A stretch of DNA of 64,000 nt from Heteronotia binoei (Eukaryota), in the NCBI RefSeq assembly GCF_032191835.1, contig NC_083229.1, forward strand, positions 83,018,001 through 83,082,000, written 5' to 3'. The number at the start of each line of letters is the position of its first letter. The stretch's first letter is position 1. A model generated the notes under the pieces. It made no database searches. It was not told where the DNA came from and saw only the letters and a list, made by a program, of their open reading frames with translations. Of the stretch, positions 1 through 15,945 are shown piece by piece. Both the position numbers and the translations under genes were made by a program.

Positions 1-169
1 ACACAAGATTCACAAAGCTGAACAACCTATTTTACTTCAACATCATTTCAGAAACAGACAGGAACAGGAGATTGTAATTCAGTAATCATTACACACATCA
101 CAAAACTTAGGGCAATGGAACCCCCAGGCACCCAAAGGGGTTAACTCCATTCCCTTCATGGTATCCTAT

Positions 170-530
170 GGTTTTTTAAAGACAAACAAATATTTATTTA
201 AAGTATAAGCTTCTGTGTGCAAGCACACTTCCACAGATACATTCCAATAAAAATGTAGGCACCAAAGTTCACACAGTAAATCATATTTCTTCAAATATTA
301 CACGCAAGTAGGGGTGCGTTAGTAGCCAAAAAGAACTGATTAGAGTCAATATGCATACGTAACAGAGCAATAAACACAGTCAAGACTGGAATAACACATT
401 TGCTAGGACATATAAATGGTAGCAAATTGATGTTCAGATAATAAAGGAGTTAAAAACAGGTGTGAGAACCAAGTTAGAATCCAGTGGTCCCTTTAAAACC
501 AACAAAGTTTTTTTTAAAAAAAAAACCTAA
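170..530. mobile_element. Degenerate Penelope-like terminal-repeat fragment
   Basis: Resembles the reptile PLE terminal module seen at 2333-2666 (…aagcttctgtgtgcaagcacacttccacagatac…; gaatccagtggtccctttaaaaccaacaaa). Confidence 0.3.
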
Positions 531-1154
531 AACAAAACTGTGCATAAGCAAGAACTGAGTAATTTAGCTGGTGCAACTGGATTTACACAAGCTAAATCCA
601 ATATCTTTGTTGGGCCCTGGGGGTTCCACTGCCCTGAGTTTTGTAAAGATTGTAATCCAGCAATCACTTGTTCCAGTCTGTTTCTGAAATGATGTATTTG
701 GCAGCCAAATCAGCTATTTTTCCAGGTTGTATTCCATTCAGACAAACCGAACGCACATCTGTATTCTTTACAATGCTCAGAAAGAGGCACGTTGACAGAA
801 CTGTCTGTGATACTTTATATTCTAGTGTTTTTTAAATCCTAAATAGTAAATTGACAACAGACACCTAAGCTTTAAATTCTTCTGCATTCCTGCTTTGAAG
901 TTTAACTGTACTTCCACTGGATCTTCCTCCAAGTTGTAGTGTACAGAAGTGATGTATTTTCCAAGTTGAATATATATATGTATTACATGTGTATAGATAT
1001 ATTTATTAAAACCCTTAGGCAGCTGTTGCTGTCCATTGTTTTAATGTGGTGTTACTAAACAATTTTAGCTTTCTGTTGTTCAGCTGTTACATTTTTCTCT
1101 CTATCTGATGTTGGTGCTGCCTTCAGCTTTTTGGCACAATCTGATCTGGGAACA

Positions 1155-1425
1155 TGTTATGTATTGAGACTGGAACTTGGCCTTAGAGTCAAGCAGAGAC
1201 TTGACTGAGCTCGAGGTTCCATAATAGCTAACTGGATTCTGGAAAGAGGCCAATCAGGGATCGTTAGGCCAGCCATGAACCTATAGTTGTGTGTGATGGG
1301 TTTTAGTGTGGAGTTATTTGCATGCATATAAGCAGGACCTTTGTCCCTGCAAGTCAGTCAAGTTTCTACCTTGCTATGCTGAATTAACTATCACCTGAGC
1401 GTCCTCATGCTTCTAACCCAGTACA
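1155..1425 (+). mobile_element. Possible solo LTR
   Basis: TG…CA ends, CCAAT (gccaatca) and TATA-like (catataagc) motifs; no TSD found. Confidence 0.25.
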
Positions 1426-1703
1426 TTTCAGAACACAAATTGAATTTGAGTGATGACTCTCAAGGCTGATTTTGAACTGAATGATTTCCTAAGTACCTTG
1501 AGTAAAAATGGCAGCCTAAAACTCATTTCTTAGTCAAATACAAAGCTTTCATTTAGACTGTTCTATGCTTTAAAAACAAACTAACAACCTTTTAACCAGT
1601 CATTTAATTCATGATTGGAACAAGTTTCACATAAACAAAACTCTGCAAATTGATGTCATGAGTTTGAAATGTTTAGTTTAAAAAATTATATTATTGTTTG
1701 CTA

Positions 1704-1920
1704 TAGGGCTGTCAAGCTAGCACCGGGTGCAGGGAGAGAGCAGGCTGCCAAAGGGCCCTGTTGTCATCAACCAGAAGTGATGTCAACATGCTGGGCATGT
1801 CATGCCAGGAATGCTCTAGGATTCATGGTAAAACTTCATGGTACCATAGAGTTTTTACCACAAATCTTAGAGCATCATGCTGAGAAGACTTCCTCACCAC
1901 AGCAGAGGAGGGCAACCCTA
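1704..1920. mobile_element. Non-autonomous hAT-type MITE (TAGGGTTGCC…GGCAACCCTA family)
   Basis: TIRs tagggctgtc/ggcaacccta; 8-bp TSD gtttgcta (1696-1703)/gtttgata (1921-1928); internal palindrome aaacttcatggtaccatagagttt. Confidence 0.8.
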
Positions 1921-2332
1921 GTTTGATATATTAAGCCCTTTTTTACTTTTTTTTTTTTAAATGAGAACAGGCTATTGTCTCTTAGCAGTGAGTAAGCATT
2001 GAATTGTCTCAAAGATAAATTAGTAAAATAAACAAATTAAATTAGTAAAATAAGAACAATTCAGTAAACTAAATCTTCTAGATATTTGTGGAACTTTTCA
2101 AGCCTCAAGTGCTGATTGCCAGTTTTAGCTTTATGAATGCCATCAAAACTAAGATTAGAAATCGGCTAGATACAGATCACCTGGAGAATTAAATGAGAAT
2201 TAAACTGCATATGTCAAATGAGAATAATATTAATTCTGACAGTGTTTTCAATTTCTGGAAACAGAGAAAAGAAGAAGAGTTAAATTAAAACATTTTCTGA
2301 TAAAATTTGACTTGATTCTGCTTACAGTTATG

Positions 2333-2666
2333 GAAAAGAATAGAGAGTCCGGTAACACCTTAAAGACTGAAAAAATTTGTAGTAGGATGTGAGCTATTGT
2401 GAGTCACAGCTCACTTCTTCAGACAGTGAGCTGTGACTCATGATAGGTCACATCCTACCACAAATTTTGTCAGTCTTTAAGGTGCTACTAGACTCTTGCT
2501 CCCAAGACTTTTTTGAACTCCTTTGCATAATAGGCCACACCCCTCTTCTGTAGCCAATCATCCAAGAGTTTATAGGGCTCTTAGTACAGGGCCTACTGTA
2601 AGCTCTTGGAGGATTGTGCTGCTCTTTTCTACTGCTACAGACAGACTAACATGGCTACCCATCTGT
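2333..2666. mobile_element. Non-autonomous Penelope-related element with inverted terminal module (plus nested MITE fragment)
   Basis: Imperfect inverted repeat ~2345-2500 (gagtccggtaacaccttaaagactg…cagtctttaaggtgctactagactc); flanked by 11-bp direct repeat ttacagttatg (2322-2332, 2667-2677); degenerate hammerhead core on minus strand. Confidence 0.6.
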
Positions 2667-2941
2667 TTACAGTTATGTTTAAATCATTCCTAAAATATAG
2701 TTTTAAATAATTATTTAATACCCATGTAAGCAAGTTCCATATAAATATATAATTAATTCAAATGATAATAGTTTATATTTATGTTTGTAAACTAAAATAT
2801 AAAAATATAAAAAAATCTAAGTCCACTCACAATTTTAAAGCAAGCACCATTTTTGGCTCATGAAGGAAGGCATATTTTATCAACAAAGGAAAACTTTTGC
2901 TCGCAGCGCCTTGCACCTTAGAGTGAACTTGTATACCCATG

Positions 2942-3266
2942 TGTGACAGACAGGACAGATTCCATCTCTCTTTAAGAGCAACCAATGAGAACTGATAGAA
3001 TGTTGGGGAAAGACAGTTGGAAAATAGTTAAAAGAACAGTTGGGAATCAGCAGCTAGGGAGTTGAGGGAAAAGAAGATGTCTGACTGAGTTAAACTGTGG
3101 CAAAAAGTTTCTTAGAGTTGGCTGAAAAGAATCAATTTGTAACAAAGGATCCCAATTGCAGGAATAGGGAAACACTGTTACCTCTAACGTTCTTCAGTGT
3201 TATGTTCAACCTATAAATAAAAGTTAACTTCTTGCTTTGTTTAACCTTGTGAGCTTTTGTGTCTCA
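2942..3266 (+). mobile_element. Possible solo LTR
   Basis: tgtgaca…tgtctca termini, AATAAA near the 3' end; no matching TSD. Confidence 0.35.
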
Positions 3267-3341
3267 GAGGAAAATACACACACACACACACACAAGCACT
3301 AATATCTTGGTCCACATATGTATGTAGCATCTGAATGGAAC

Positions 3342-3541
3342 CAGAGCTTTTTTTGAGCAGAAACACACAGGAATGCCGTTCCGGCTGGCTTAGTGTCAGA
3401 GGGTGTGGACGAATATGCAAATGAGTTCCTGCTCAGCCCTTTCTACAAGAAAGCCCTTTGTGAAACAATGGTGATGTCAGGGAGTATGGCCTAACATACA
3501 AATGAGTTCCTGCTGAACTTTTTCTACAAAAAAAAGCCCTG
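3342..3541. mobile_element. Non-autonomous hAT MITE (CAGGGCTTTTT family)
   Basis: TIRs cagagcttttt/aaaaagccctg; perfect 8-bp TSD aatggaac (3334-3341, 3542-3549); internal direct repeat aaatgagttcctgct. Confidence 0.9.
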
Positions 3542-3549
3542 AATGGAAC

Positions 3550-3712
3550 AATGTATGAGACCAATGAGTCTGATAAAGCTGGAAAACTGCGTTATGCCCT
3601 GAACCAGACGATGCTGACTACAGGGCTATTAACAGGAGACAGTTAGAGAGGGGAAAATTGTGCGCAATGCTGTAGCTGAGTTCATTTACAGAAGATGTAG
3701 ATGTAGATGAAT
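3550..3712 (+). pseudogene. Probable C-terminal stump of a Harbinger (HARBI1-like) transposase
   Basis: With one frameshift reads EPDDADYRAINRRQLER/GKIVRNAVAEFIYRR, like the G-x-x-V-R-x-A-x-A-x-F tail of Harbinger transposases; followed by AATAAA signals (~3882, ~3931). No catalytic DDE region is visible. Confidence 0.4.
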
Positions 3713-4050
3713 TTGCAGTTCTCCCTAAATTACATGCGGTTAATCTGTCCCACATACTCAGGTGGGTACTGAAAGCCGGCCATTAAATTTCGCGCTTGCT
3801 CAGTTACGTAACTATGTGATAATGCTGTTTTTCATGTTTTTCATTTTTTACTGCTTTGAAACACCATATGCTTTTATATATAATAAAGTTGCTGCAGCAC
3901 TGCCTTTGCTACTGTATTCCTAACTACCTTTAATAAAGCCTGTTGCCTTGTTTAAACCACAAAAATAACCATTTGATATCCTTTTTCGGGGGCCAATGTA
4001 GTCTTGTCCGCCATATTTCATCTTCTGTCCATCAGCACATGCATTGCCGC

Positions 4051-4080
4051 CTGATTGGATAATTCAAAATAAAGGGCGGG
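4051..4080 (+). promoter_or_regulatory. Putative internal promoter of Myb/SANT gene 1 (inverted CCAAT box + GC box)
   Basis: ctgattgg at 4051-4058 and gggcggg at 4074-4080, about 55-85 bp upstream of ATG 4135. Confidence 0.4.
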
Positions 4081-4134
4081 TGGCTGATATCTTGCTAACG
4101 CGAAACTGCATTGTTACGATACTACATTATCAAA

Positions 4135-6272
4135 ATGGCTGTCAGGCGGAGAAGAGGAACTTTCTGGCAGAGGGATGAGGTCAGCGCTATGCTTCAGATT
4201 GTGGAAAGGAGCGGCTATGTGGAGGAGCTGATGTCCAGCATGCACATGGAGATGAGGGTGATTTATGCTGCCATTTCAAGGAGGCTAGGAAGGGGCTACA
4301 GCAGGACCGCGGAGCAGTGCCGGTCCAAATTTAAAAGACTGCGCTGCGATTTCATAGCGAGTCTGCAGGCCTGGGGAGGGATACCAAGGGCATCTGGTAG
4401 GACCCCATATCACGACAGGATGGTGCGGTTGTGGGAGCTTGCAAGGAGACCACGATGGGAGGATAGGCACCATGATTTTGAGTATGATCCCAACACACGA
4501 ACGTTCACCCCATTATTACTGCTTTAAGGCATAAGTACTATGACAGAACATTTCTCCCCTCCACTTCTCTCTGTTCTGATATTGCTTTTATAAATAAAAA
4601 TAGGGTCTAAAATTTGCATAGCAATTCCTGTTCCACACCCCATGGTGGCATGGCCCAAGGTTACACTCACCAATGTAATGGTGATGACTCTCAAATAATA
4701 ACTAAACACACAGGACTTATTAGATGCATCTTAGATGCTGCATGCTTATGGGACTGCATTTTGTTAACTAATGGGTAGTCCGCAGTTATGTTCAGTTAAC
4801 CAGAGCTTTAAGATGCCTTTAGCTGTGTGTTTGCATTGGTAGGCAGAGGCAGCCCTCTCATGTATCATGGTAGGAATGTAAATCCCTGTGCTTGCATGTA
4901 TGAGTTTTCTGCATTCCATTGCTAACAATGCTTCCATCACATATAACAGTTGACACCCGTCCAAGACCAGGGCAGCAGGAGCAGCTGCCATCGTGGCAGG
5001 AAGTAACAGAGGATGCAGAGGGTGCAGCAGATCCACAAGTGGAAGGCCCTGAAGTGCCAATGGAGGGGCACAGTGGTACACCACCTGATAAAGCATCCAC
5101 TGCATCAGGTGATGCACACTGAACTCAATAAGTATGGCTGTGAGCAGGCGTAGGGCAACCTAATATACATTACAGCAACCTGATGTTGAAGCGAGATGGC
5201 TAATAACTTCCCATTATTTGTGGCAGGATATGACTGACACCAATTGCTTATCATACATTACTTTATTGAGGGAGGGTGGGTGAGGGGTGGATGAAGGCAT
5301 TAAGTAAGGCATGAAGGAAGGAGGGAAGGCCAGAAGGCAGCCAGGCAGTTAGGTAGGTCATGGAGGGAATAAGTAAGGCAGAGAGAGCGGGTGGCATGGA
5401 GGGAATAAAAACACAGTACTGCAATAAAAACTACAGATGTCTGTTAGCATGCAGGCGATCATCATGTTCAATCTACCTATGCTCATGCAATGTTTGCGGT
5501 ATGCATGTTTTTCAAGTATTAAATATGTTATGTGACACATCTTAGGTGACACAAGTCCAGGAGGTGAGTGGGAGCAGCTGGAGCGGCCACAGGAAGCTGC
5601 AGCGGCAGAAGTGCCTTGCGTTGCTGCTCCAGATGAACACGTAGAGGAGGATGGTGGCAGCCAGCAGCATCACATGTCAGCAACTTCAGGTGCTGCAGAT
5701 TGAAAACAATGGGCATGGAGGGAGAGGTGGAAAGAGAGCAAATGTAACTATTACATTACACCCCATATAATTGATAATTGAGATGATATGAGTAAATTGT
5801 CTTCTCTAACGTTTAATGATGGTGATTGCATGCTTCTGTAGCACCACTAAGTGCTCCCTTGCTGAAAGACAGTGAAGTAAGCATGGCTTAATGAAGAAGC
5901 TTGGTAGAGCAATGCATCCCATTTTGACAATTTGCTTAGATGGAGGGTGTGCTTTCATTGTAGGGTCATCTGGAGGACCTGACGTACCGCATGATGTAGG
6001 TCCCGGGGAAAATTTCCTCACTGCATTAGCACGCTTAAAGGCCCTGTGCAGGTCTACATGTGAGTGTTCACAAATTACATTACAGTTATGTCATGGCAGT
6101 CATTTGCATGCATTTAACTTACTGGGTTTCCTCTTCAATTGCAGTCACTGCTTTCAATAACCGACTGGACGCCGTGGAGAGGAGGATGCGGTGATTTGAG
6201 CGGGAGCCAAGAGCACTGCAGTCCAGGATGGATGCATTAACAGGGGGTGGGGTTGTTGGGGAAATAGCTTAA
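4135..6272 (+). pseudogene. Myb/SANT-like (Myb_DNA-bind_4/MADF-type) gene 1, ~5 exons, C-terminal coiled coil
   Basis: Exon 1: MAVRRRRGTFWQRDEVSAMLQIV…IYAAISRRLGRGYSRTAEQCRSKFKRLR…TPYHDRMVRLW. Phase-1 exons 4950-5108, 5546-5689, 5964-6059 and 6145-6272 with AG acceptors. Last exon TAFNNRLDAVERRMR*FERE has an in-frame TGA at 6192-6194; the exon-1 donor is degraded. Confidence 0.75.
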
Positions 6273-6816
6273 TTGTTATCAAAAATAGTTCTATATCAAT
6301 GTTTTTATTCTGTTAAAAAAAGAATTTAATGTTATAATAAATAATATATGCTTTTTGACATTACTCTACATCTCTCTGGTATGTTGCCATTGCACTGAAA
6401 TGATTTTTAGTCCCACAGTGTGAGATGTGTCAAACATAACTTTATTAAAATGTGAAATAACATTATAACATAACGTTAGTCACGAAAACGTGAAAATAAG
6501 AGCCAAACAGTTGTACAGCTGTTGTACCTGAACAATACAGTTTAGGAATGGGTCGCCCTTGCTTTGCAAGCATAGCAAAACAAATTTTACCTGCGTTAAC
6601 AACAGTGATGCAGCAAGGAAACTATGGCTATAAGTTTCAAATTTCCTTGATGAGTATTCCTTCTGCAAACCAATAAATAACATTGCATAAACACACAACA
6701 AAATAACTTAACAGTATAGCAGGACTTACATCTGTAATAGATCCAGTGCTATATGTGTGCGATTGCCAAACCAAGCTTCCATGCAGTTATCCTTACATAT
6801 CCGTATGGAAATTTGA

Positions 6817-8870
6817 TTATGGCTCAAAATAGACCCGTTGCTTTCCTGTGCATGATCGTTTCTTGCCCCTACGGGAAGCCACAGCACTGTTACTTGAGGA
6901 GGGAGTATTGTCCAGGAGGCTCTGACTCTCAGGCATAGTGTCTTCTGCCAACACTGGCAAAGATGGCAATGATGCTCTGGTGCCTGCTATATCACTGACC
7001 TTTGTCTCTGCCCTACTGCTTTTGAGAAAGTCACCTATATTGGCTAGCATATCTACGGCTGCCCTCATCACATCTACAGTTTTCTGTGTGGCCTCATTCA
7101 ATGCCTGTCTGTCACGCTCCCCCTCCTCTGCTAGGACAGAGAACTTTCTGTTTTCAAGTGTTATCAGGCTGCCGAAGCGTTCCATGGCATCAGCATGTTC
7201 CGAATGACTTCGATTTATCATCTTAGTGGCAACCTCATTCAGCATAGCAACCCTCCATTGCCGATGTGCCTCATTCTCCCGCTTCTCATCTTTCTTTTGC
7301 TGTCTTGGTGATACAGGCCTCTCATCTCCTGAACTATCTGAAAGCACAATGAGGCAAAGCTTAGCTTTTCGGAAGTACTGTGTTCCTCTAACTCATGTTT
7401 GAAAACATAAAAAAGAATCCATTTGTAACATGTTCAATGCTACTGCATTAATGGTCTTTGCTACTGTGGAGTAATCACCAAGCACATGAGCATACCTCCT
7501 TCCCCTTCTTCCTGTTCCAACAGGACAGCTTCCCCTGCTCCTTGCTTTTCAGTCCCACAACCCTCTTCCTCATCACCGTCATCAGAAAGTGACACATTAT
7601 TCCGTTCTCCACCTGCTGAGGGGTCACAAATATAAGTGTCAGTTACAGAAATACTTTCCAGTGTATTTTGTTCTAAAATGAACTGCAATTTAAGCCGCCG
7701 TGAATACATAAAGCAGTCTCCTCAATGGCAATTATCTCTCCACCACACAGTGATCTGAGTATATAACATTGTGGTAGCAGGGTTATACATGTTAAAAGTT
7801 CAGCACTGCACATTTGGAGTTATGACATGGTCAATGCTTTTCATGTATAGGAAAGGTATGCATAGGCCACATCCATTCTCTATCAAGGGTCTGTGGCAGA
7901 AAGGACTGCATGCTGTACTTACCCCTCATAGACTGGTCAGTGATACCTGGATCTTCCACAGGCAGGTTCTGGTCATCGAATGTATTCTGAGTAGTCACAC
8001 ATCTTGAGCCTATAGAAATGTTGCAAAATGAATCCGATTTAGGTAATGCATGGAGGGAAAATAACAGCAGCACACGGGAACCATCACTGTTTTTAAATGC
8101 TTTGGGGGTTAGGGTTAACACTTTAGAAACCGTTTGACCAAAGAAAGGGAGGGCGGTATTGATTTGCCGCCTCACCATCATTGACTCCTCTCCCCCCCCC
8201 CCAGGCACCCGCTATATCTTCATGAGCCCTTTAAGAGGGGGGGGGCGTTGAGATAATTCAGAAATCAATTTTTTTTTAAAGGGAGAGACGTTTGAATGTA
8301 ATAAGTAGAGAGCAATCCCTAATGTGGGTTTCATTAGGGGTGAAAAGGGGGGGTTATTCAAATAAATTGATGGTCAAGGAACAGTGCGTGGTCGAGAAAC
8401 TCACCTGGAGTGGAGTCAGGGGTGTAAGTACAGAAATCTGCAGTGTTAATAGTCTCAAGGTCCATGCCAAACATGTCCTCTGATCCTGCATTAGGCATGT
8501 TCTCCTTGTTAGCCTTATAGAACTGCACCTTATAGCTTTTCTTGAGTACTGTTGGACGCACGAACCTATCATTCTTAAGGAAGCGGTTCAGCACGTTATA
8601 GTAAGGGCAGAACACTGGGGATCTTCCAGTCTGTGCGTTCTAGGTAACGCATCTCCGATAGTCCCTACGCAAGCCCTTTTTTTTAGTGCGGCACTCATGA
8701 GCCGACCTTTTGTGTCCCTGGGCATGCATTTCCCTAGATATTCTCTCATAAACATTGATGTTTTTGTGGCTAGCAGCGAGCACCCTCTGTATCTTCTCTT
8801 CACTCCAAATGGTCAGCAAAGCTTCTGTTTCCCGTGCACGTGCGCCGATAGGCTTGCTGCTTAAAGCCAT
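6817..8870 (-). pseudogene. Myb/SANT-like (MSANTD/ZSCAN29-type trihelix) gene 2, 4 exons, ~416 codons, one premature stop
   Basis: Exons 8870-8405, 8009-7923, 7672-7496 and 7337-6817; GT-AG phase-1 introns (GTGAGT, GTAAGT, GTATGC donors). Domain: ETEALLTIWSEEKIQRVLAASHKNINVYERISREMHAQGHKRSAHECRTKKKGLRRDY…CPYYNVLNRFL; single TAG at 8640-8642. Confidence 0.85.
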
Positions 8871-9224
8871 TGCTCGCCTGTACTTTACTGCTGTGCGGTG
8901 GAAGAGACTGCAAGCTATGCAATGCTGCCTGCTGCTACCGGCCCCTTCTTCCTCCCATGCAAATTATGATGATTGCAGGAAATCACAACCTGATTTGTCG
9001 CTTCCACGCAAAGCCTGCCAGCATTGGCCAGCTCGCAGTGATGTGGGCTATTCTCTGATCCTCGTGTAGGAGTCGCAGTCTTCACGAGATTCCTCAACCC
9101 CCCCCACACAGGTCTGCAAACATAAACATGGCGTCAAAGTCAATTTATGAGCATACGATAGCTTACATTCCAAATATTACTTAGGTGGTGTTAAAGGTGC
9201 AGTTGTCTAGCGCTATGCTCTATT

Positions 9225-9700
9225 GCTTTATACCAACATGACTGCCCACGTGGATCAACCCTCATGCATACTAACCTATCATTTAATGGATGCGGATTGC
9301 ATTGTAACAGAATAAAACCAAATACCCAAAAAATGGCGAGCACGTGTCATTAGTAAATGGATGGTTGCTTTAGACCAACATGACTGCCCATCTGGATCAA
9401 TCCTCATGCATGCATATATCACTTAATGGATGCGGATTTCATTGTAATGCAATAAAATGACAGTAAATAAGGTGGGCACATGTTAGTAAGTGGATGGTTG
9501 CTTTAGACCAACACAACTGCCCACCTGGATCAACCCTCATGCATGCGTGTATCACTTAATGGATGTGGATTTCGTTGTAACACAATAAAATGACAGAAAA
9601 ATAATAAAAATAAAATGACAGAAAAATAATAAAAATAAAATGACAGAAAAATAAGGCCCGCACATGTCATTAGTAAGTGGATTGCAATCAAATGGATTGC
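9225..9700. repeat. Tandem array: three ~135-140 bp units plus three ~27-bp units
   Basis: Unit tgcttta(t/g)accaaca…ctgccca…tggatcaa(c/t)cctcatgcat…taatggatg(c/t)ggatt starting ~9226, ~9366, ~9499; aataaaatgacagaaaaata x3 at ~9583-9655. Confidence 0.9.
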
Positions 9701-11879
9701 GGAATTTCATTGTAACGCAATGGGGGGGGGAAGGCGGAGCGAGAACATGTCAGAAGTCATAGGTAAACACAGTGCTAGGTTCTACAGCTGATGATTTTGC
9801 GTGAGACGTCAAAAGGGGAGGTAGTGGGAGGACTAACAGGCAATGGTGGGTAATGCTCCCAAAAGCTGTCGCTGCGAAACAGGATGATTTTCCCACTGAA
9901 AGCTCTGCGGATTGAATCCGCAGGTTTTCAGAAAGTCCGCAAAAATGAGCATTGAGATACCGCGCAGTGAAAATTGTAAAGCCGCGGATGAAAACGAGGA
10001 TGCGGGGCAACATGTGCGAAATCCAACAAATGAACCAGAGAAAAAAGGGATGCCACCGCGGTTTAAACGCTAGTGCAAAATCGGTCTGAGCCTCCAAATT
10101 TGAGTGAGAGCTGGTTAGTAAAGGGGGCTGGACTATCCTGTCTGTGGATGTCTCTGGGTGAGTGAGAGAGAGGATGTGAGGTGTGAAATGTTCGTGGCTC
10201 TCTCTGTATTTTAAAAAAGACAAGAAGGGTGGGAAATGTGTCACCAGATCTACTTGTACCCTAAACCAGAGAGTAGTATAGAGGGTGACTATATCCAAAT
10301 GCACACCTCTATTGGTTTGGTTACTTAGTGGCTAACTGTACATTCCTCCTAAAACAGATCCTCCCTTACCATGCAGTTATTGTAGATAAAGTGCCACTTT
10401 GGTCAAATGATGACAATCTCAGTCATTTTGGAATGTAAAAAACATTGCGACATTGTATTTTCCTGTCCAATACCTACTGGCTATTCATATCTAGTTATTT
10501 AACTAGAATTCCATATAAATGAATAGACCAGTTCACCCAAGCATGCAATAGTGATCCTTTTAATATTTCCTTGTAGGTGTCATTTTAAGAGCCCAAATAA
10601 TTATTTTTCTGGTTTTTCTGACTGGTTATGTGGCTTCCATGAAATGTAGCTTTTTAAGATTCAGACTAGGGTCCTTGCTCTTTTCAGAATTCCCCCAATT
10701 TGATCAGTTGCATCCCCTGTGTAATCACCTCTCCCTGTACATCTAATTGGCTTCTTGTTTGTCAAGGTGAACTTTTACAATGTCAGACTAATTTCTTGAA
10801 ATGTCCATGATTTCTTTGACAGTTCTATGGCTTCTAGAAGTTGGGATGAATTTCATATCAGTTGATATCTTTTTCTTCCAAGTGAAAGAAATTGTGGGCT
10901 GGATCAATTTATGGACAGTACTGACATATGTAAAAATTAAAACATAAAGTTCTGAGCACCTGATTTTGGCCTGTTGGGGTTCTTCAACGGAGATCTGCAT
11001 TATATCAAAACATTAATTATGTTTTTGTCACTATACAGTGAAGTACTACAGCCTCTACCATATTCAAGCAAATCAGTACAAATACTGATGCTGTTATCAG
11101 GCCTGGCACGTGGGAGTTGGCAAACTAGGCAACTGAGCCTCCCTGAGCCTCCGCTGCTCTTTTGGCTCTCAGGGATCCCTGGTTAAAATACAGTGGATAG
11201 ACTGCTGTTGAAACTTGGATACAGGCATTATGTCACCCTGGTGTTGAAAACAAATGGCCTGGAGGGAGAAAATGTCCCTTTAACAGAAGTTCAATGTGTG
11301 GAAATGGGCAACCAAAGACTTTCATGCTTGAACAACTGGAGTCCTTTTTAAAATATTTTCTTAACAATTCTTTCTAAGGTTTCAAGTATGCTTGTCATGT
11401 TTTTGTGGAGTTAAATGAGAAACATGCATGATTGTGGAAGTGCATTTCCTTATCCTTATATAGTATCTGACAATATTAAGCATATAATAATAATAGCAAT
11501 AGCAATAGTAATAATAATAATCATCATCAAAAGATAATTGGCTCATATTAGAGTTGTCCTTTAAAATGCAGATTGCCAAAATTATCAAGCAAACTACTTT
11601 AGGTGAAAATGTAATATTTCCTTTAACCTTAAGAATACATTGGTCATGCTGTTTCTCTATTTTATGCAGAGAGGTTTACACCTATTTTATATTTCTAGTC
11701 CATATATTAATTGTCTCACATTCATCTTTCTTCTTCTTACTTATCTCACTGAGGGCAAATGAGCAAAATGGGGATACAACAGACCATTATACTCATCATA
11801 GCAGCTCCCTTACTCCACCTTAAAGCAGGAGTGTAATCAGAGTGCGACAGAGCAAACCTCCAGGAGCAGTGACAGCACA

Positions 11880-12098
11880 TAATTATTTATTCCCTTTATT
11901 TATATTCTCTTCCCCAGTAGGCATCCAAAGCAGCTTACATCATTTTCCTCTCCTCCATTTTATTCTCACAACAACCCTGTGAGTTAGGTTAGGCTGCGTA
12001 TGACTGGTTGAAGGTTTCCTAGAAAACCTCAATAAGAGTGGTACTTTGAACCTGGGTATTTCAGATCCTGATCTGACATGCTAACAACTACACCACAT
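11880..12098 (-). mobile_element. tRNA-derived squamate SINE (MIR/Squam3-like, L2-type tail)
   Basis: ttttattctcacaacaaccctgtgag…aggttaggctg…tttgaacctggg…ctacaccaca (reverse of SINE head/core). Confidence 0.7.
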
Positions 12099-12530
12099 TG
12101 TTTAATCAATTTGATAGTCTTCTGACCTCACCCCCAGTGAGCCCATCAATATTTGCTATCATCCTGTTTTTCCTTGATCTTCTCTTAGCTTTAAGCCAAG
12201 TTTTTGCTCAGGTTTCCTTAACTCATATGCACAAAATCCTTCATAATTTTTTTGTTTCTTCTACCTCCTTTTTAGGTTGTTTCTGTCTTTTAAATGTAGT
12301 AAATCTTTTTTTAAAAAACAATAACACTTTTCCCATATCAGTGGCTGATTATCTTTTTATTCATGCTCCATTTTAATGGGGTTCCTGGCTACCATAACAA
12401 CTTTAGTAAAATGGAGCAGGAATAGAGGATAGTCAGTTGATAGTATAGGGAAGGTGGCTGCCACAATTATACCAACCTCTTTGATGGGGAAATGTTTTAA
12501 AAGGATGCAAAAGATGCCATGAAGTCCCTG

Positions 12531-13371
12531 TGTGGAGAAACGCCATTTTAGTCAGTGGTGGTGCTTCATTTGGCAGGGGTCAGTAAATCTCTCAGCAGGC
12601 TTTGTAGCCTTCCCCTCACTCCCCCCCTCCCTTCCAGAGCCAAACCAACAACGCTAGGGGGAAAATCTCCTAGAGAGGCAGGAAGTGCTTTTGTTCTTGG
12701 CATGTGTGTTAGCAGGAAGAGAAGGGCAGTTGGAAGCCAGCGCTCGAGCGAGCATGTGGTGAGCAATGGAGGCTCCTGCCTGGGAGGCCCCCAGGCAGGC
12801 AGACTAAGTAAGTAATTCTCAAGACAGGACAAGTTTAGATCAGGGCCAGCAGGACGCGTTTATAAACACCTTTCCTTTGTCATGCTGTTTGCTGTGCGTG
12901 TGCTGTGCTGTGCTAACTTTTTAAACGCAACTGTTTTTGCTTTGTTTTTCTTTTCCTATCTTTTTCCCTTTTTAAATAAATATATTTTTACTGTTTACAT
13001 GCTGGCAGTCAAACTCTGTACCACATAGATCCCCAAACCGCTTTAGACCACGCTGTTTTATAACAGGGGCCCCGGGCAAGGGGGAAGGCATGCAGTTGGA
13101 TAAGGTGCCAATCCTCCAGGGGTGCCCCAAAGAAGTGCTGAGGTCTCTGTGAAACCCAAGTGCAGGGTGGCAGAGGACCTGGAGGCCTAGCCTCATAGCG
13201 GGAGAGGGGGATTGGGAGTCCTGTTCCTCTCAATCTGATCCCCGGGACTGAGCAGGTGGTGGCAGCGCGCCCAAGGGGCAGGAGGAGAAATAGCTCCCTC
13301 CAGGAGTTGGCGACTCAATAGGGAGCTGACGGGACCGGGTCTGAAGGCAGAATCGGGCCGGTTCCGTCACA
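12531..13371 (+). mobile_element. Solo LTR (841 bp, Gypsy-type)
   Basis: TG…CA termini (tgtggag…cgtcaca), 5-bp TSD ccctg (12526-12530, 13372-13376), internal AATAAA ~12975. Confidence 0.8.
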
Positions 13372-14220
13372 CCCTGCTTAAGAGGTATTGCATGGAGGCT
13401 GTTTCTGAACTGGATCTATGTTGTCTATAGCTCCAATACTAGTGTAAAAGGTTGTTGTAAAGAGCAATTGTGCTTTGATTTTAAAGCCTTCATGATTATT
13501 TGGTGTCTAGTTTTAATGGCAGATTTTTATTGTTTGTGATAGATAAGCTGTGTCCTTCAAATCCTACACACAAAGAATATTTTCAAGATGATAACGAGTA
13601 GATTTTATCAAGAAAACATGCTGAGAAATATGAAACTATCACTTAACAAGCTATATTTAATGTTAACGTATTGTAAGGCACTTCTGTATGTGAAATCAAT
13701 GTTAGGAGTATTTGTGTTCAGCTTTTAACAATGCAAATTGATTTTTCTCCATATAAACACTAGAAAATGTATTCTGAAGAACTCCATTTATTCATTTTGG
13801 CTTAAAGATGGCATTATATTTACCAAATAGACAGAACCCTCATATGAGATGATAATACTACAGTTTAAACCTGCAATCCTATGCAAATTATCTGGGAGTA
13901 ACCTTGACTGAGCAAAGCAGGACTTCTTTCTGGGTAAACATGCATAGATTTGCACTGGATTAGACCTAAAAGAATAACCCAGACCATCAGTAAGTCTATA
14001 TAGTGGCTATGAGCTAGTTGCCTTCATCTTGAAACAGTCAAAACACATTCATAACAGCACAATCCCAAGCATGTGTACTTAGTAGTAAGTCCCACTGAGT
14101 TCAATAGAACTTGTTCTTAGCAAGTGTATTCAGGATTGCAGAATTAGTCACTTTGAATTTGTGAAATATGTAATGCTATGTACAGGAATCAGATATATAG
14201 ACAGCAGTGAAGGGAGAGAT

Positions 14221-14533
14221 TAGGGAAGCCAGTATCCCACTGGGGTGGAGATCTCCCACTCCCAGGGCCTGTTGCCCTCCACCACCCAGCTGTGTGGCAA
14301 GAGGAAATGCTGGGAGGGATGGGGGACACAGTCCTTGGTGTGATGACATTGCTTTCAGAGTGACTTAGGAGTGGCATCATCATGCCAGGTGATGCCTTAG
14401 CATTCCATTGGTGATTCTGTTCATGCTAGAAGTAATATCATCATGCCAGGGACATTGACTGCATCCACCCCAAATCAGAAGACTTCCACCTCCCCCATTT
14501 CTTGCCAGCTGCCTAGCTGTTCTTGGCTACCTG
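14221..14533. mobile_element. Degenerate TAGGGTTGCC-family MITE
   Basis: Termini tagggaagccag…ttggctacct; tgatgaca/catcatca-rich interior shared with copies at 1704, 53540 and 54000. Confidence 0.5.
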
Positions 14534-14624
14534 AATTTGGAGGACAGAGTTTGAAAGAGAGCAGGAAATTAGGAGGAATTTTGTCTTGAGAAAGAGAATT
14601 GCAGGGGCTGAAGTAGTTCTAGAT

Positions 14625-14815
14625 ATTGGCTGTTGTAGATTTCTTCTTCTCAGTATGACCCAGAGAGAACTCCAATTTTCTGGGTTACACCTCTGAGGAT
14701 GCCAGTCACAGTTGCTGGTGAAATGTCAGGTCTCACAATGCCAAGACCACGGTCACACAGCCCAGAAAATTTACAACAGCCAATGACCTCTGGCTCTGAA
14801 AGCCTTCAACAACAT
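14625..14815 (+). mobile_element. Penelope-like terminal repeat fragment containing a hammerhead ribozyme motif
   Basis: Near-identical to arms at 28965-29460; ends gaaagccttcaacaac. Confidence 0.7.
14689..14731 (+). ncRNA. Minimal type I hammerhead ribozyme motif (PLE-associated)
   Basis: acct-CTGAGGA-t-gccag/tcacagttg/ctggt-GAAA-tGTC-aggt: core boxes, stem II and stem I (acct/aggt). Confidence 0.65.
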
Positions 14816-14867
14816 ATAGTTCTAGATATTCAGTATAATAAAACATATTCATGTTGAACTAGATGTC

Positions 14868-15945
14868 ACTTAACATAAGAAGAGCCCTGTTCTAGATCAA
14901 ACCACTGGTCCATATAGTCCAACATCCTGTCTCTTACAACCAGTTCCTCTGAGGGCCAGCCACAGAATACAGAGGCCAAGGCTTTTCTCTGATATTTCCT
15001 CCTGGCACTAGGATTCAGATGTTTACAGCCTCTGAATGTAGAGGCTCCCTTTAGTCATCATAGCTAGTATCCACTGATAGACCTATTCTCAATGAATCTG
15101 TCTAATGCCCCTTTAAAGCTATATATGCCTGTAGCCATCACTACATCCTCTGTCAGCAGATTCTACATTTTCTTCACTCTCTGTAAAAAGAAGAATGTAC
15201 TTTTTGTGCATCCTGAATCACCATGTTCATTAGATGTCCTTGAGTTCTTGAATTTTGGAAGAAGGAGAAAAAATTCTCTTTGTTCATTCTCTCTACCCCA
15301 TGCATAATTTCATAAACCTCTGTCATGTCCAGACCCCACCCAACTTGTCGGTTCTCTAATATGAAAAGTCCAAGACTCTTCAGGTAGGTGCTCAAACCCC
15401 TAATCATCTTGGTTGCCCTCTTCTGAACTTTTTTCCAGCTCTCTCATGTCCTTTTTGAGATACAGTGACCAGAACTGCCCAAAGTATCCCACATAAGGCC
15501 ACATGACAGATCTATACAAGGGCATTATAATATTGACTATTTTATTTTTAGTCCTTTTCCTAATAGTCCACAACATAGACTTTATCTTTTTCACTACTGT
15601 GGTACACTGAGCCAACGCTTCCATGGATGTACCCACTATGTCTCCAAGGACTCTTTTCCCTCTCAGTTTTAGCAAATTCAGACGCCATACACAAATACTT
15701 TGTCCAGTGTGCATCACTTTGGACTTCATTTGTCACATTGCTGCCCACACATCCAATTTGTGGAAAGCCTCGCCTCCTGAAGCTCTTCACAGTTGGTCTT
15801 GGTTTTCACCATCTTGAATAATTTAGTGTTGTCTGCAAACTTGAGTATTACACTGCTCATTCCCTGTTCCAGATAATTTATGAACAAATTAAATAACTTA
15901 ACTGAAGGAAATGTATTCATATAGTGGAAAACCAGAAGCATACAT
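14868..15945 (-). mobile_element. CR1 LINE 3' fragment (ORF2 RT C-terminus + 3' UTR)
   Basis: ORF fragments SSVILKFADNTKLFKMVKT…CEELQE, KSKVMHTG, IIMPLYRSVMWPYVGYFGQFWSLYLKKD…LEK, LKSLGLF; CR1 3' end …cttatgttaag. Confidence 0.9.

What the first reader, a model, noticed from the sequence alone, without database searches (positions are those of the whole stretch)
3550..10086. Harbinger-like transposon carrying two distinct, convergent, spliced Myb/SANT genes (three-gene architecture)
Seen: a probable transposase tail (+), a 5-exon Myb/SANT gene (+, 4135-6272) and a 4-exon Myb/SANT gene with a clearly different sequence (-, 8870-6817), tail-to-tail. Each has a candidate promoter region and polyA signals, and the unit is closed by a GC-rich terminus at 10086. 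Established: canonical PIF/Harbinger elements encode one DDE transposase plus one Myb-like DNA-binding partner (e.g. zebrafish Harbinger3_DR), and vertebrate NAIF1/MSANTD genes were domesticated from such partners. Inference: this is a squamate lineage with two partner proteins, or one Harbinger nested in another. Two partners could mean divided labour (end recognition versus regulation or chromatin evasion).
Basis: partly seen in the sequence, partly recalled or inferred. Interest (0 to 1): 0.75.

Follow-up and report, generated by a model that had tools for sequence, protein, structure and literature searches.

The report
Gecko Harbinger transposon with two Myb genes
This stretch is a dead, front-truncated copy of a cut-and-paste (Harbinger) transposon lineage of geckos and at least one iguanian lizard that carries two very different Myb-type DNA-binding genes beside its transposase, where the textbook Harbinger has only one.

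Summary
Window 4135-6272 (+) and 8870-6817 (-) are a 5-exon and a 4-exon gene, each in frame across its exons. Each starts with a Pfam Myb_DNA-bind_4 domain. About 45 codons of a Harbinger transposase tail lie at 3570-3710, and a terminal inverted repeat ends exactly at 10086.

Nesting is rejected. Full-length relatives in the gecko Heteronotia binoei are collinear with the window and carry transposase, Myb1 and Myb2 between one TIR pair with 3-bp target duplications. Two leopard-gecko families that have lost all DNA similarity to it, with copies 99% identical to each other, carry the same trio between one TIR pair. Sphaerodactylus and Sceloporus loci hold the trio too.

Myb2 always lies downstream of the transposase and converges on it. 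The position of Myb1 varies. All three genes show far fewer amino-acid-changing than silent differences.

The window copy is a relic. The transposase is almost entirely lost, both Myb genes carry a stop codon, and one splice donor is lost.

Papers describe Harbingers as two-gene elements, so this is a new variant of a known kind. What the second Myb protein does is untested.

The scan reached the same reading earlier on another piece of this genome (s1-325727). This report adds the iguanian and Sphaerodactylus loci, the constant transposase-Myb2 core and the structure models.

The parts
3570..3710 (+). Remnant of the last ~45 codons of the Harbinger (DDE_Tnp_4) transposase. It has a 1-nt deletion near 3655 and a stop TGA at 3708-3710. 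Everything upstream, including the left TIR, is missing.
   Evidence: blastn and tblastn to the H. binoei transposase tail at 76-78%. The full protein in L001 and L003 hits HTH_Tnp_4 and DDE_Tnp_4. No other transposase piece is found in the 64-kb window.
4135..4477 (+). Myb1-type gene, exon 1: an extended Myb/SANT (trihelix-like) domain with an intact ORF. The donor that follows is TT instead of GT (4478-4479).
   Evidence: Pfam Myb_DNA-bind_4, E 1.1e-8. 74-76% aa identity to H. binoei copies and 59% to Eublepharis P0007. The donor is GTGAGT in L003.
4950..5108 (+). Myb1 exon 2 (acidic linker).
   Evidence: In frame with AG/GT borders. Matches exon 2 as used in H. binoei models P0003 and P0004.
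5546..5689 (+). Myb1 exon 3 (acidic linker, poorly conserved).
   Evidence: In frame with AG/GT borders. The equivalent stretch is used in P0004.
5964..6059 (+). Myb1 exon 4 (start of the C-terminal helix).
   Evidence: In frame with AG/GT borders. blastn 81% to L001 across the exon end and donor. The same peptide motif is present in an L001 ORF.
6145..6272 (+). Myb1 exon 5 (C-terminal helix). It has an in-frame TGA at 6192-6194, where H. binoei P0003 reads on, and a terminal TAA at 6270-6272.
6273..6816 (.). Tail-to-tail spacer between the two convergent Myb genes. No TIR-like sequence is present.
   Evidence: Collinear with H. binoei copies from about 6405 on. TIR search negative.
6817..7337 (-). 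Myb2-type gene, exon 4: a long helix plus a basic tail (Lys/Arg-rich, NLS-like). Stop at 6817-6819.
   Evidence: 52-56% aa identity to H. binoei P0001 and L003. Conserved motifs shown in alignment A2. AF2 models the Eublepharis counterpart as one 105-residue helix.
7496..7615 (-). Myb2 exon 3 (acidic).
   Evidence: tblastn to P0001 at 56%. In frame with AG/GT borders.
7923..8009 (-). Myb2 exon 2.
   Evidence: In frame with AG/GT borders. blastn 76% to L001.
8405..8870 (-). Myb2 exon 1: a full-length Myb/SANT trihelix domain. It has an in-frame TAG at 8642-8640 and a 15-bp deletion of the first conserved Trp.
   Evidence: Pfam Myb_DNA-bind_4, E 2.5e-13. 68% aa identity to L003. The stop lies in the same frame.
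9223..9654 (.). Tandem repeats in the right subterminal region (133 bp x 2.8 and 25 bp x 2.8). They have no counterpart in the H. binoei copies.
   Evidence: No blastn match for 9094-9790.
9791..10086 (.). Right subterminal region and right TIR (about 10062-10086, ending ...AAAATCGGTC).
   Evidence: 71-73% identical to the right ends of L001, L002 and L003. Homology stops at 10086.
10087..10089 (.). Flanking TGA, the likely right half of a 3-bp target-site duplication. The left half is lost with the truncation.
   Evidence: Full copies have 3-bp TSDs: TGA, ATA, TAT.

Best explanation
Window ~3570-10086 is the right-hand 6.5 kb of a dead, 5'-truncated copy of an autonomous PIF/Harbinger DNA transposon.

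Shown:
- Full-length members of the family (7.7-7.9 kb in Heteronotia binoei) carry three genes between one pair of ~25-bp TIRs (GGCC...) and 3-bp target duplications.
- The genes are a two-exon HTH + DDE_Tnp_4 transposase, a Myb1-type gene and a Myb2-type gene.
- Myb1 has an extended Myb/SANT domain, an acidic disordered linker and one long C-terminal helix.
- Myb2 has a canonical trihelix Myb/SANT domain, an acidic linker, a long helix and a basic tail.
- The trio recurs in families that no longer share DNA similarity, and all three genes are under purifying selection. Three genes is therefore the working design of this lineage, not an accident of nesting.
- Myb2 is always downstream of, and convergent with, the transposase. 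Myb1 changes place.

Inferred:
- Myb2 is the ordinary Harbinger partner. By analogy with zebrafish Harbinger3_DR, it would bind subterminal sites, bring the transposase to the ends and carry it into the nucleus through its basic tail.
- Myb1 is an added paralogue. Through its long helix it would pair with itself or with the Myb2 helix and so add a second DNA-reading head, or regulate the complex.
For: Domains:
-.

Collinearity and single TIR pair:
- The window is collinear with three H. binoei copies on different chromosomes, and similarity ends at 3586 and 10080-10086.
- TIRs and 3-bp TSDs are TGA, ATA and TAT. The L001 copy splits a LINE endonuclease ORF cleanly.
- No internal TIRs.

Other families and species:
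- Eublepharis L006 and L008 are 99% identical 8.9-kb copies with a perfect 19-bp TIR. The TSD is CTT at L006; at L008 the flanking trinucleotides are CAG/CTG. They hold the same trio.
- Eublepharis L005 is a 14.8-kb element with a 16-bp TIR and TSD TAA that holds the trio.
- Sceloporus L009 and Sphaerodactylus L012 hold the trio within 10-12 kb.

Selection and relatedness:
- pN is 0.14-0.42 against pS of 0.36-0.9 for all three genes.
- Myb1 and Myb2 are 27% identical (E 1e-8) and form two clades with 100/100 support.

Structure:
- AF2 models P0007 (Myb1-type) as a helical domain, a disordered linker and a 64-residue helix.
- AF2 models the Myb2 last exon as a 105-residue helix plus a tail.
- The nearest solved structure for both is plant GT-1 trihelix. 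Myb2 matches over the whole domain and Myb1 only in part.

Literature:
- Papers describe a two-gene organisation as characteristic (PMC13668399; PMC9179366; PMC8437027).
Against: - The window copy shows only one end and no working gene, so the architecture is inferred from relatives.
- No RNA or read data could be obtained. Expression and splicing rest on frame-consistent exon borders and on NCBI gene models.
- No TIRs were found for Sceloporus L009, and none were looked for at Sphaerodactylus L012.
- Nothing tested here shows that Myb1 takes part in transposition. Myb1-type genes also occur alone (Rhineura) and fused to KRAB/SCAN.
- Subterminal motifs gave no clear left/right asymmetry.
- Repbase and Dfam could not be consulted, so an existing three-gene consensus entry cannot be excluded.
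Confidence: 0.87

Rival explanations
1. The architecture is one element, but Myb1 is a passenger or regulator rather than a transposition subunit. It could be a captured or duplicated Myb gene that damps or times transposition, counters host silencing, or is simply tolerated.
For: - Its position and orientation vary between families while the transposase-Myb2 pair is fixed.
- A 99%-identical derivative (L005) has lost exon 1 of one Myb1-type gene.
- Myb1-type genes occur alone in Rhineura and fused to KRAB/SCAN in Sphaerodactylus.
Against: - Myb1 exon 1 shows the strongest purifying selection of the three genes (pN 0.14 vs pS 0.74).
- Every family examined keeps at least one Myb1-type gene. 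L005 still has P0021.
- A tolerated passenger would not persist across families that have lost all DNA similarity.
Confidence: 0.3
2. These are two independent Harbingers, one nested in or abutting the other, each bringing its own Myb gene.
For: Two Myb genes only 27% identical could suggest two sources. L002 shows that internal duplications do occur.
Against: - The order is the same in every H. binoei copy, between a single TIR pair with matching 3-bp TSDs.
- No internal TIRs.
- The same trio lies inside perfect TIRs in 99% identical Eublepharis copies.
- There is only one transposase per element.
Confidence: 0.03
3. These are host genes: a conserved syntenic pair of MSANTD/NAIF1-like domesticated genes, not a transposon.
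For: Both ORFs are conserved at protein level between species.
Against: - Copies sit on different chromosomes with unrelated flanks. One sits inside a LINE ORF.
- TIRs, TSDs and a linked transposase are present.
- The window genes carry stop codons.
Confidence: 0.02

Closest known systems
Canonical animal PIF/Harbinger elements, e.g. zebrafish Harbinger3_DR (Kapitonov & Jurka 2004; Sinzelle et al. 2008, as cited in PMC13668399 and PMC9179366)
   Same: DDE_Tnp_4 transposase with an HTH domain, a separate Myb/SANT-like (trihelix) gene, TIRs of 16-25 bp, 3-bp TSDs (TAA in one family here) and subterminal short repeats.
   Different: This lineage has a second Myb/SANT gene of a different clade (27% identity) with its own coiled-coil tail, giving three genes instead of two. 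One Eublepharis family has four. The elements are also larger (7.7-14.8 kb) and all genes have introns.
Harbinger-Snek of sea kraits (PMC8437027)
   Same: A Harbinger in a squamate genome. It has deletion derivatives that keep only some genes.
   Different: Snek is a two-gene element acquired horizontally from marine animals. That paper states Harbingers were not reported in solely terrestrial vertebrates. The lineage here is in terrestrial geckos and Sceloporus and has three genes.
Domesticated Harbinger pairs and Myb genes: HARBI1/NAIF1, MSANTD1-4 (PMC9392472), plant ALP1/ALP2 and HDP1/HDP2 (PMC5339849)
   Same: The same two protein types (transposase-derived plus Myb/SANT-derived) working as partners. 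Myb1-type domains are also found in host-like genes (Rhineura; a KRAB/SCAN fusion in Sphaerodactylus).
   Different: Those are single-copy host genes without TIRs. The element here is mobile and multi-copy. The relation of Myb1 and Myb2 to MSANTD1-4 and NAIF1 was not tested.
Arabidopsis GT-1 trihelix DNA-binding domain (PDB 2jmw, 2ebi)
   Same: The nearest solved structure by sequence for both Myb domains.
   Different: GT-1 is a plant transcription factor. Myb1 matches only its central part.

Membership tests
PIF/Harbinger DNA transposon | DDE_Tnp_4 (PIF/Harbinger-type) transposase | tested here: met
   Full-length relatives hit DDE_Tnp_4 at E 1e-22 to 1e-31, plus HTH_Tnp_4. The window keeps only the last ~45 codons.
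PIF/Harbinger DNA transposon | Separate Myb/SANT-like DNA-binding gene in the same element | tested here: met
   Two such genes are present, both Myb_DNA-bind_4.
PIF/Harbinger DNA transposon | Terminal inverted repeats | tested here: met
   H. binoei copies: ~25 bp, GGCC(C/G)TTTTC.CAC.... Eublepharis: perfect 19 bp and 16 bp. In the window only the right TIR survives, ending at 10086.
PIF/Harbinger DNA transposon | 3-bp target-site duplication (typically TWA) | tested here: met
   TGA, ATA, TAT, CTT and TAA at five insertions. At a sixth (L008) the flanking trinucleotides are CAG on the left and CTG on the right. Only one (TAA) fits TWA. The window cannot be tested because one end is lost.
PIF/Harbinger DNA transposon | Two-gene organisation (one transposase, one Myb partner) | tested here: not met
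   Three genes in every family examined, and four in Eublepharis L004. This is the point of difference. It is a descriptive norm, not a catalytic requirement.
Domesticated Myb/SANT host genes (MSANTD/NAIF1-like) | Single-copy, syntenic, no TIR/TSD, intact ORF | tested here: not met
   Multi-copy on different chromosomes, TIR/TSD present, and stop codons in the window copy.
Domesticated Myb/SANT host genes (MSANTD/NAIF1-like) | Phylogenetic placement inside the MSANTD1-4 or NAIF1 clades | not tested

The most novel reading that the evidence does not exclude
This squamate Harbinger lineage uses a three-protein machine. Myb1 and Myb2 pair through their long C-terminal helices into a heterodimeric DNA-binding partner that reads composite subterminal sites and recruits the transposase. 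Both Myb proteins would then be required. This would be the first DNA transposon known to need two dedicated, non-catalytic DNA-binding subunits, and a ready source of the KRAB-Myb fusion genes seen in lizards.
Probability: 0.3. Interest if true: 0.72.

Novelty: new variant of a known kind. Interest (0 to 1): 0.56.

Why it matters
- Harbingers are the model for transposons that split DNA recognition and catalysis between two proteins. They gave vertebrates HARBI1/NAIF1 and the MSANTD genes.
- A lineage that stably keeps a second, very different Myb protein raises a concrete, testable question: what does a third subunit add (end discrimination, synapsis, regulation, evasion of silencing)?
- The 99% identical, apparently intact copies in the leopard gecko offer natural material for that test.
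- The lineage also shows that terrestrial squamates have their own, recently active Harbingers. One recent paper said none had been reported in solely terrestrial vertebrates (PMC8437027).
- It points to a source for Myb-domain fusions in lizard host genes.

Tried and rejected
- Word-index protein search with Myb1 exon 1 found nothing because of the length window.
- No sequencing runs were listed for the stretch, so read laying could not be used. No expression, splicing or copy-depth evidence exists.
- No second copy in the window, and no transposase remnant elsewhere in it.
- The TGCGGATT-type motif is not enriched window-wide.
- Subterminal k-mer and repeat analysis gave no convincing left/right asymmetry that would assign one Myb to each end.
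- No TIRs were found around the Sceloporus trio.
- No clear nested-element TIRs around the extra P0021 gene in L005.
- The fish locus L010 turned out to be host multi-Myb genes, and the Rhineura locus L011 a solitary Myb1-type gene.
- Axolotl P0064 and Rhineura P0039 were not on record.
- Rfam: no hits in 1-14000.
- Literature searches for three-ORF or two-Myb Harbingers, and for gecko + Harbinger + Myb, found nothing relevant.
- Joined (spliced) protein models were not sent to any search or fold. Exons were searched one by one by reference. A script only counted frame and stops of the joined exons.


Full report
**What is in the window**

Two coding stretches carry the Pfam Myb/SANT-like domain Myb_DNA-bind_4: 4135-4524(+) at E 1.1e-8 and 8643-8870(-) at E 2.5e-13.

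Exon sets that stay in frame with AG/GT borders can be drawn for both genes.
- Myb1(+): 4135-4477, 4950-5108, 5546-5689, 5964-6059, 6145-6272.
- Myb2(-): 8870-8405, 8009-7923, 7615-7496, 7337-6817.

Relatives match these exons piece by piece. The two genes lie tail to tail with a 544-bp spacer. The window has no second copy.

I did not send joined exon models to any search or fold. Only frame and stop counts were computed on them.

**The window copy is dead**
- Myb1 has TT instead of the GTGAGT donor after exon 1.
- Myb1 has an in-frame TGA at 6192-6194, where the H. binoei model P0003 reads on.
- Myb2 has an in-frame TAG at 8642-8640 and lacks five codons that include the first conserved tryptophan.
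- Of the transposase only about the last 45 codons remain (about 3570-3710), with a 1-nt deletion.
- No other transposase piece exists in the 64 kb.
- The break coincides with an unrelated 81-bp duplicated sequence at 3394-3533.

**Relatives in Heteronotia binoei**

The last exon of Myb2 found two proteins of the gecko Heteronotia binoei. Their loci, and a third reached through the transposase, gave three further copies (L001, L002, L003).
- L001 and L003 are collinear with window 3586-10080 at 64-81% DNA identity. Similarity stops there.
- Upstream they carry a complete two-exon transposase with HTH_Tnp_4 and DDE_Tnp_4.
- The elements are 7,746 and 7,901 bp, with ~25-bp TIRs beginning GGCC/GGGC. 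The 3-bp duplications are TGA and ATA. L002, a 12.3-kb copy with an internal partial duplication, has TAT.
- The L001 copy interrupts a LINE endonuclease ORF that reads through cleanly once the element and one TGA are removed.
- The window's right TIR ends exactly at 10086 and is followed by TGA.
- Searches with the TIR find no internal copies.

**The trio is older than this family**

An exhaustive profile search with Myb1 exon 1 gave 194 relatives. The best were from geckos (Heteronotia, Eublepharis, Sphaerodactylus, Gekko), followed by Sceloporus, Rhineura, Anolis, axolotl and teleosts.

In Eublepharis macularius:
- L006 and L008 are 99% identical 8.9-kb copies with a perfect 19-bp TIR (GGCCGATTCCAGATGGGCA). 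The flanks are CTT/CTT at L006 and CAG/CTG at L008.
- They hold transposase(+), Myb1(+) and Myb2(-), with a 236-bp tandem array of variable length in a Myb2 intron.
- L004 and L005 are 99% identical copies of a 14.8-kb element with a 16-bp TIR and the classic TAA duplication.
- That element holds transposase(+), Myb2(-, annotated as a 385-aa protein) and two Myb1-type genes (P0021 upstream, P0007 between). L005 lacks exon 1 of P0007 through a 907-bp deletion.

These families share no DNA similarity with each other or with the window family, only protein similarity of 40-58%.

The trio is also clustered elsewhere.
- In Sphaerodactylus townsendi the order is Myb1(+), transposase(+), Myb2(-).
- In the iguanian Sceloporus undulatus the order is transposase(+), Myb2(-), Myb1(+), in a decayed copy for which I found no TIRs.

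Across all of these, Myb2 is downstream of and convergent with the transposase. Myb1 moves.

**Selection and relationships**

For all three genes, non-synonymous differences are far fewer than synonymous ones.
- Window versus H. binoei: Myb1 exon 1 pN 0.14 against pS 0.74. Myb2 exon 1 pN 0.14 against pS 0.36. Myb2 last exon pN 0.21 against pS 0.42.
- Between families: pN 0.26-0.42 with pS saturated.
- Two H. binoei copies compared with each other give a ratio near 1 for Myb2 exon 1, as expected for decay after insertion.

Myb1 and Myb2 are 27% identical over 93 residues. They form two clades with 100/100 support and long stems, each element contributing to both. The split therefore predates these families.

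**What the proteins look like**
- Both Myb domains are nearest to the plant GT-1 trihelix among solved structures. Myb2 matches over the whole domain (E 8e-7). The Myb1 profile matches only centrally (E 3e-4). The Pfam matches show the same pattern.
- AlphaFold2 on an alignment of Myb1-type proteins gives a confident helical domain (residues 30-135 of P0007), a disordered acidic stretch and a single 64-residue helix.
- The last exon of Myb2 folds as one 105-residue helix followed by a disordered basic tail rich in Lys/Arg.

**How it most likely works**

Shown: a single mobile unit with three selected genes.

Inferred from the Harbinger3_DR model (Sinzelle et al. 2008, as summarised in PMC13668399): Myb2 is the standard partner that binds subterminal sites, recruits the transposase and imports it. 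Its fixed position, canonical domain and basic tail fit this.

Myb1 is an added paralogue. Its conserved long helix suggests pairing with itself or with the Myb2 helix. It would then act either as a second DNA-reading subunit or as a regulator.

I put about 0.3 on an obligatory three-subunit complex and about 0.3 on a regulator or passenger role. The rest is undecided. Short repeated motifs exist near the ends (CGTTTTCGCAC x3 at the left end of L001; TTGCGCA-type motifs in L006). They do not separate cleanly into left and right sets.

**Comparison with what is known**

Three recent papers state that autonomous PIF/Harbinger elements have a two-gene organisation (PMC13668399; PMC9179366; PMC8437027). 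The last also says Harbingers had not been reported in solely terrestrial vertebrates.

My text searches found no description of a Harbinger with two Myb genes. Repbase and Dfam could not be consulted.

The element passes every defining test of the superfamily except the two-gene norm, so I class it as a new variant of a known kind.

**Earlier scan findings**

An earlier follow-up in this scan (s1-325727) reached the same reading on another copy in this genome, and my independent tests agree. This report adds:
- the Sceloporus and Sphaerodactylus loci;
- the constant transposase-Myb2 core against the wandering Myb1;
- the four-gene Eublepharis element;
- the selection figures and the structure models.

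**Limits**
- No reads or RNA were available.
- The window itself shows only a truncated relic.
- Function is untested.

Noticed in passing
L004 1-14978 / L005 909-15748 (Eublepharis macularius): A 14.8-kb Harbinger (TIR GAGATATTTCACACTC, TSD TAA) carries two Myb1-type genes (P0021 upstream on the opposite strand, P0007 between transposase and Myb2) plus Myb2, which makes four genes. L005 differs from L004 by a 907-bp deletion that removes P0007 exon 1. P0021 and P0007 pair weakly in the tree (80/57), suggesting a duplication inside the element.
   Followed up: partly
L002 2271-14528 (H. binoei): A 12.3-kb copy with matching TAT flanks contains an internal head-to-tail partial duplication of the element (positions ~1922-7577 of the L001 copy repeated). 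The first unit lacks Myb1 exon 1.
   Followed up: partly
L003 10001-13668, protein P0003: The NCBI gene model splices from inside the transposase ('...ILHNI') into Myb1 exons 2 and 5, giving a transposase-Myb1-tail chimera. This is either an annotation artefact or a real read-through transcript.
   Followed up: no
protein P0009 (Sphaerodactylus townsendi): It is annotated as 'zinc finger protein with KRAB and SCAN domains 2-like isoform X5'. It carries a Myb1-type domain (52% identical to the window's) and the Myb1-type C-terminal helix after a KRAB-like N-terminus, so it may be a host-gene fusion. Compare scan note s1-328417.
   Followed up: no
window 3394-3533: Two tandem ~81-bp units (80% alike) of an unrelated sequence sit exactly where the element is truncated. 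No other copies occur in the window.
   Followed up: partly
window 9223-9654; L006 13932-14699 vs L008 13930-16357: Lineage-specific tandem arrays lie inside these elements. In the window they are 133-bp and 25-bp units in the right subterminal region. In Eublepharis a 236-bp array in the Myb2 intron differs in copy number between 99% identical copies.
   Followed up: partly
window 4135-4477 vs 8405-8870: Synonymous divergence from the H. binoei copies is about twice as high in Myb1 exon 1 (pS 0.74) as in Myb2 exon 1 (pS 0.36). DNA identity is also lower across the Myb1 gene (64-70% against 69-78% elsewhere). Possible causes are CpG decay of the GC-rich exon or recombination between subfamilies.
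   Followed up: no
window 15063-15893 vs L001 (rc) 14470-15338: A different repeat (68-76% identical, opposite orientation) is shared between the window and the flank of the H. binoei element. It is probably a common LINE or other interspersed repeat.
   Followed up: no
L003 element, transposase: The best-preserved H. binoei copy has an in-frame stop in transposase exon 1. The second catalytic Asp motif reads HN instead of HD (L001 keeps HD). Both of its Myb first exons are intact.
   Followed up: partly
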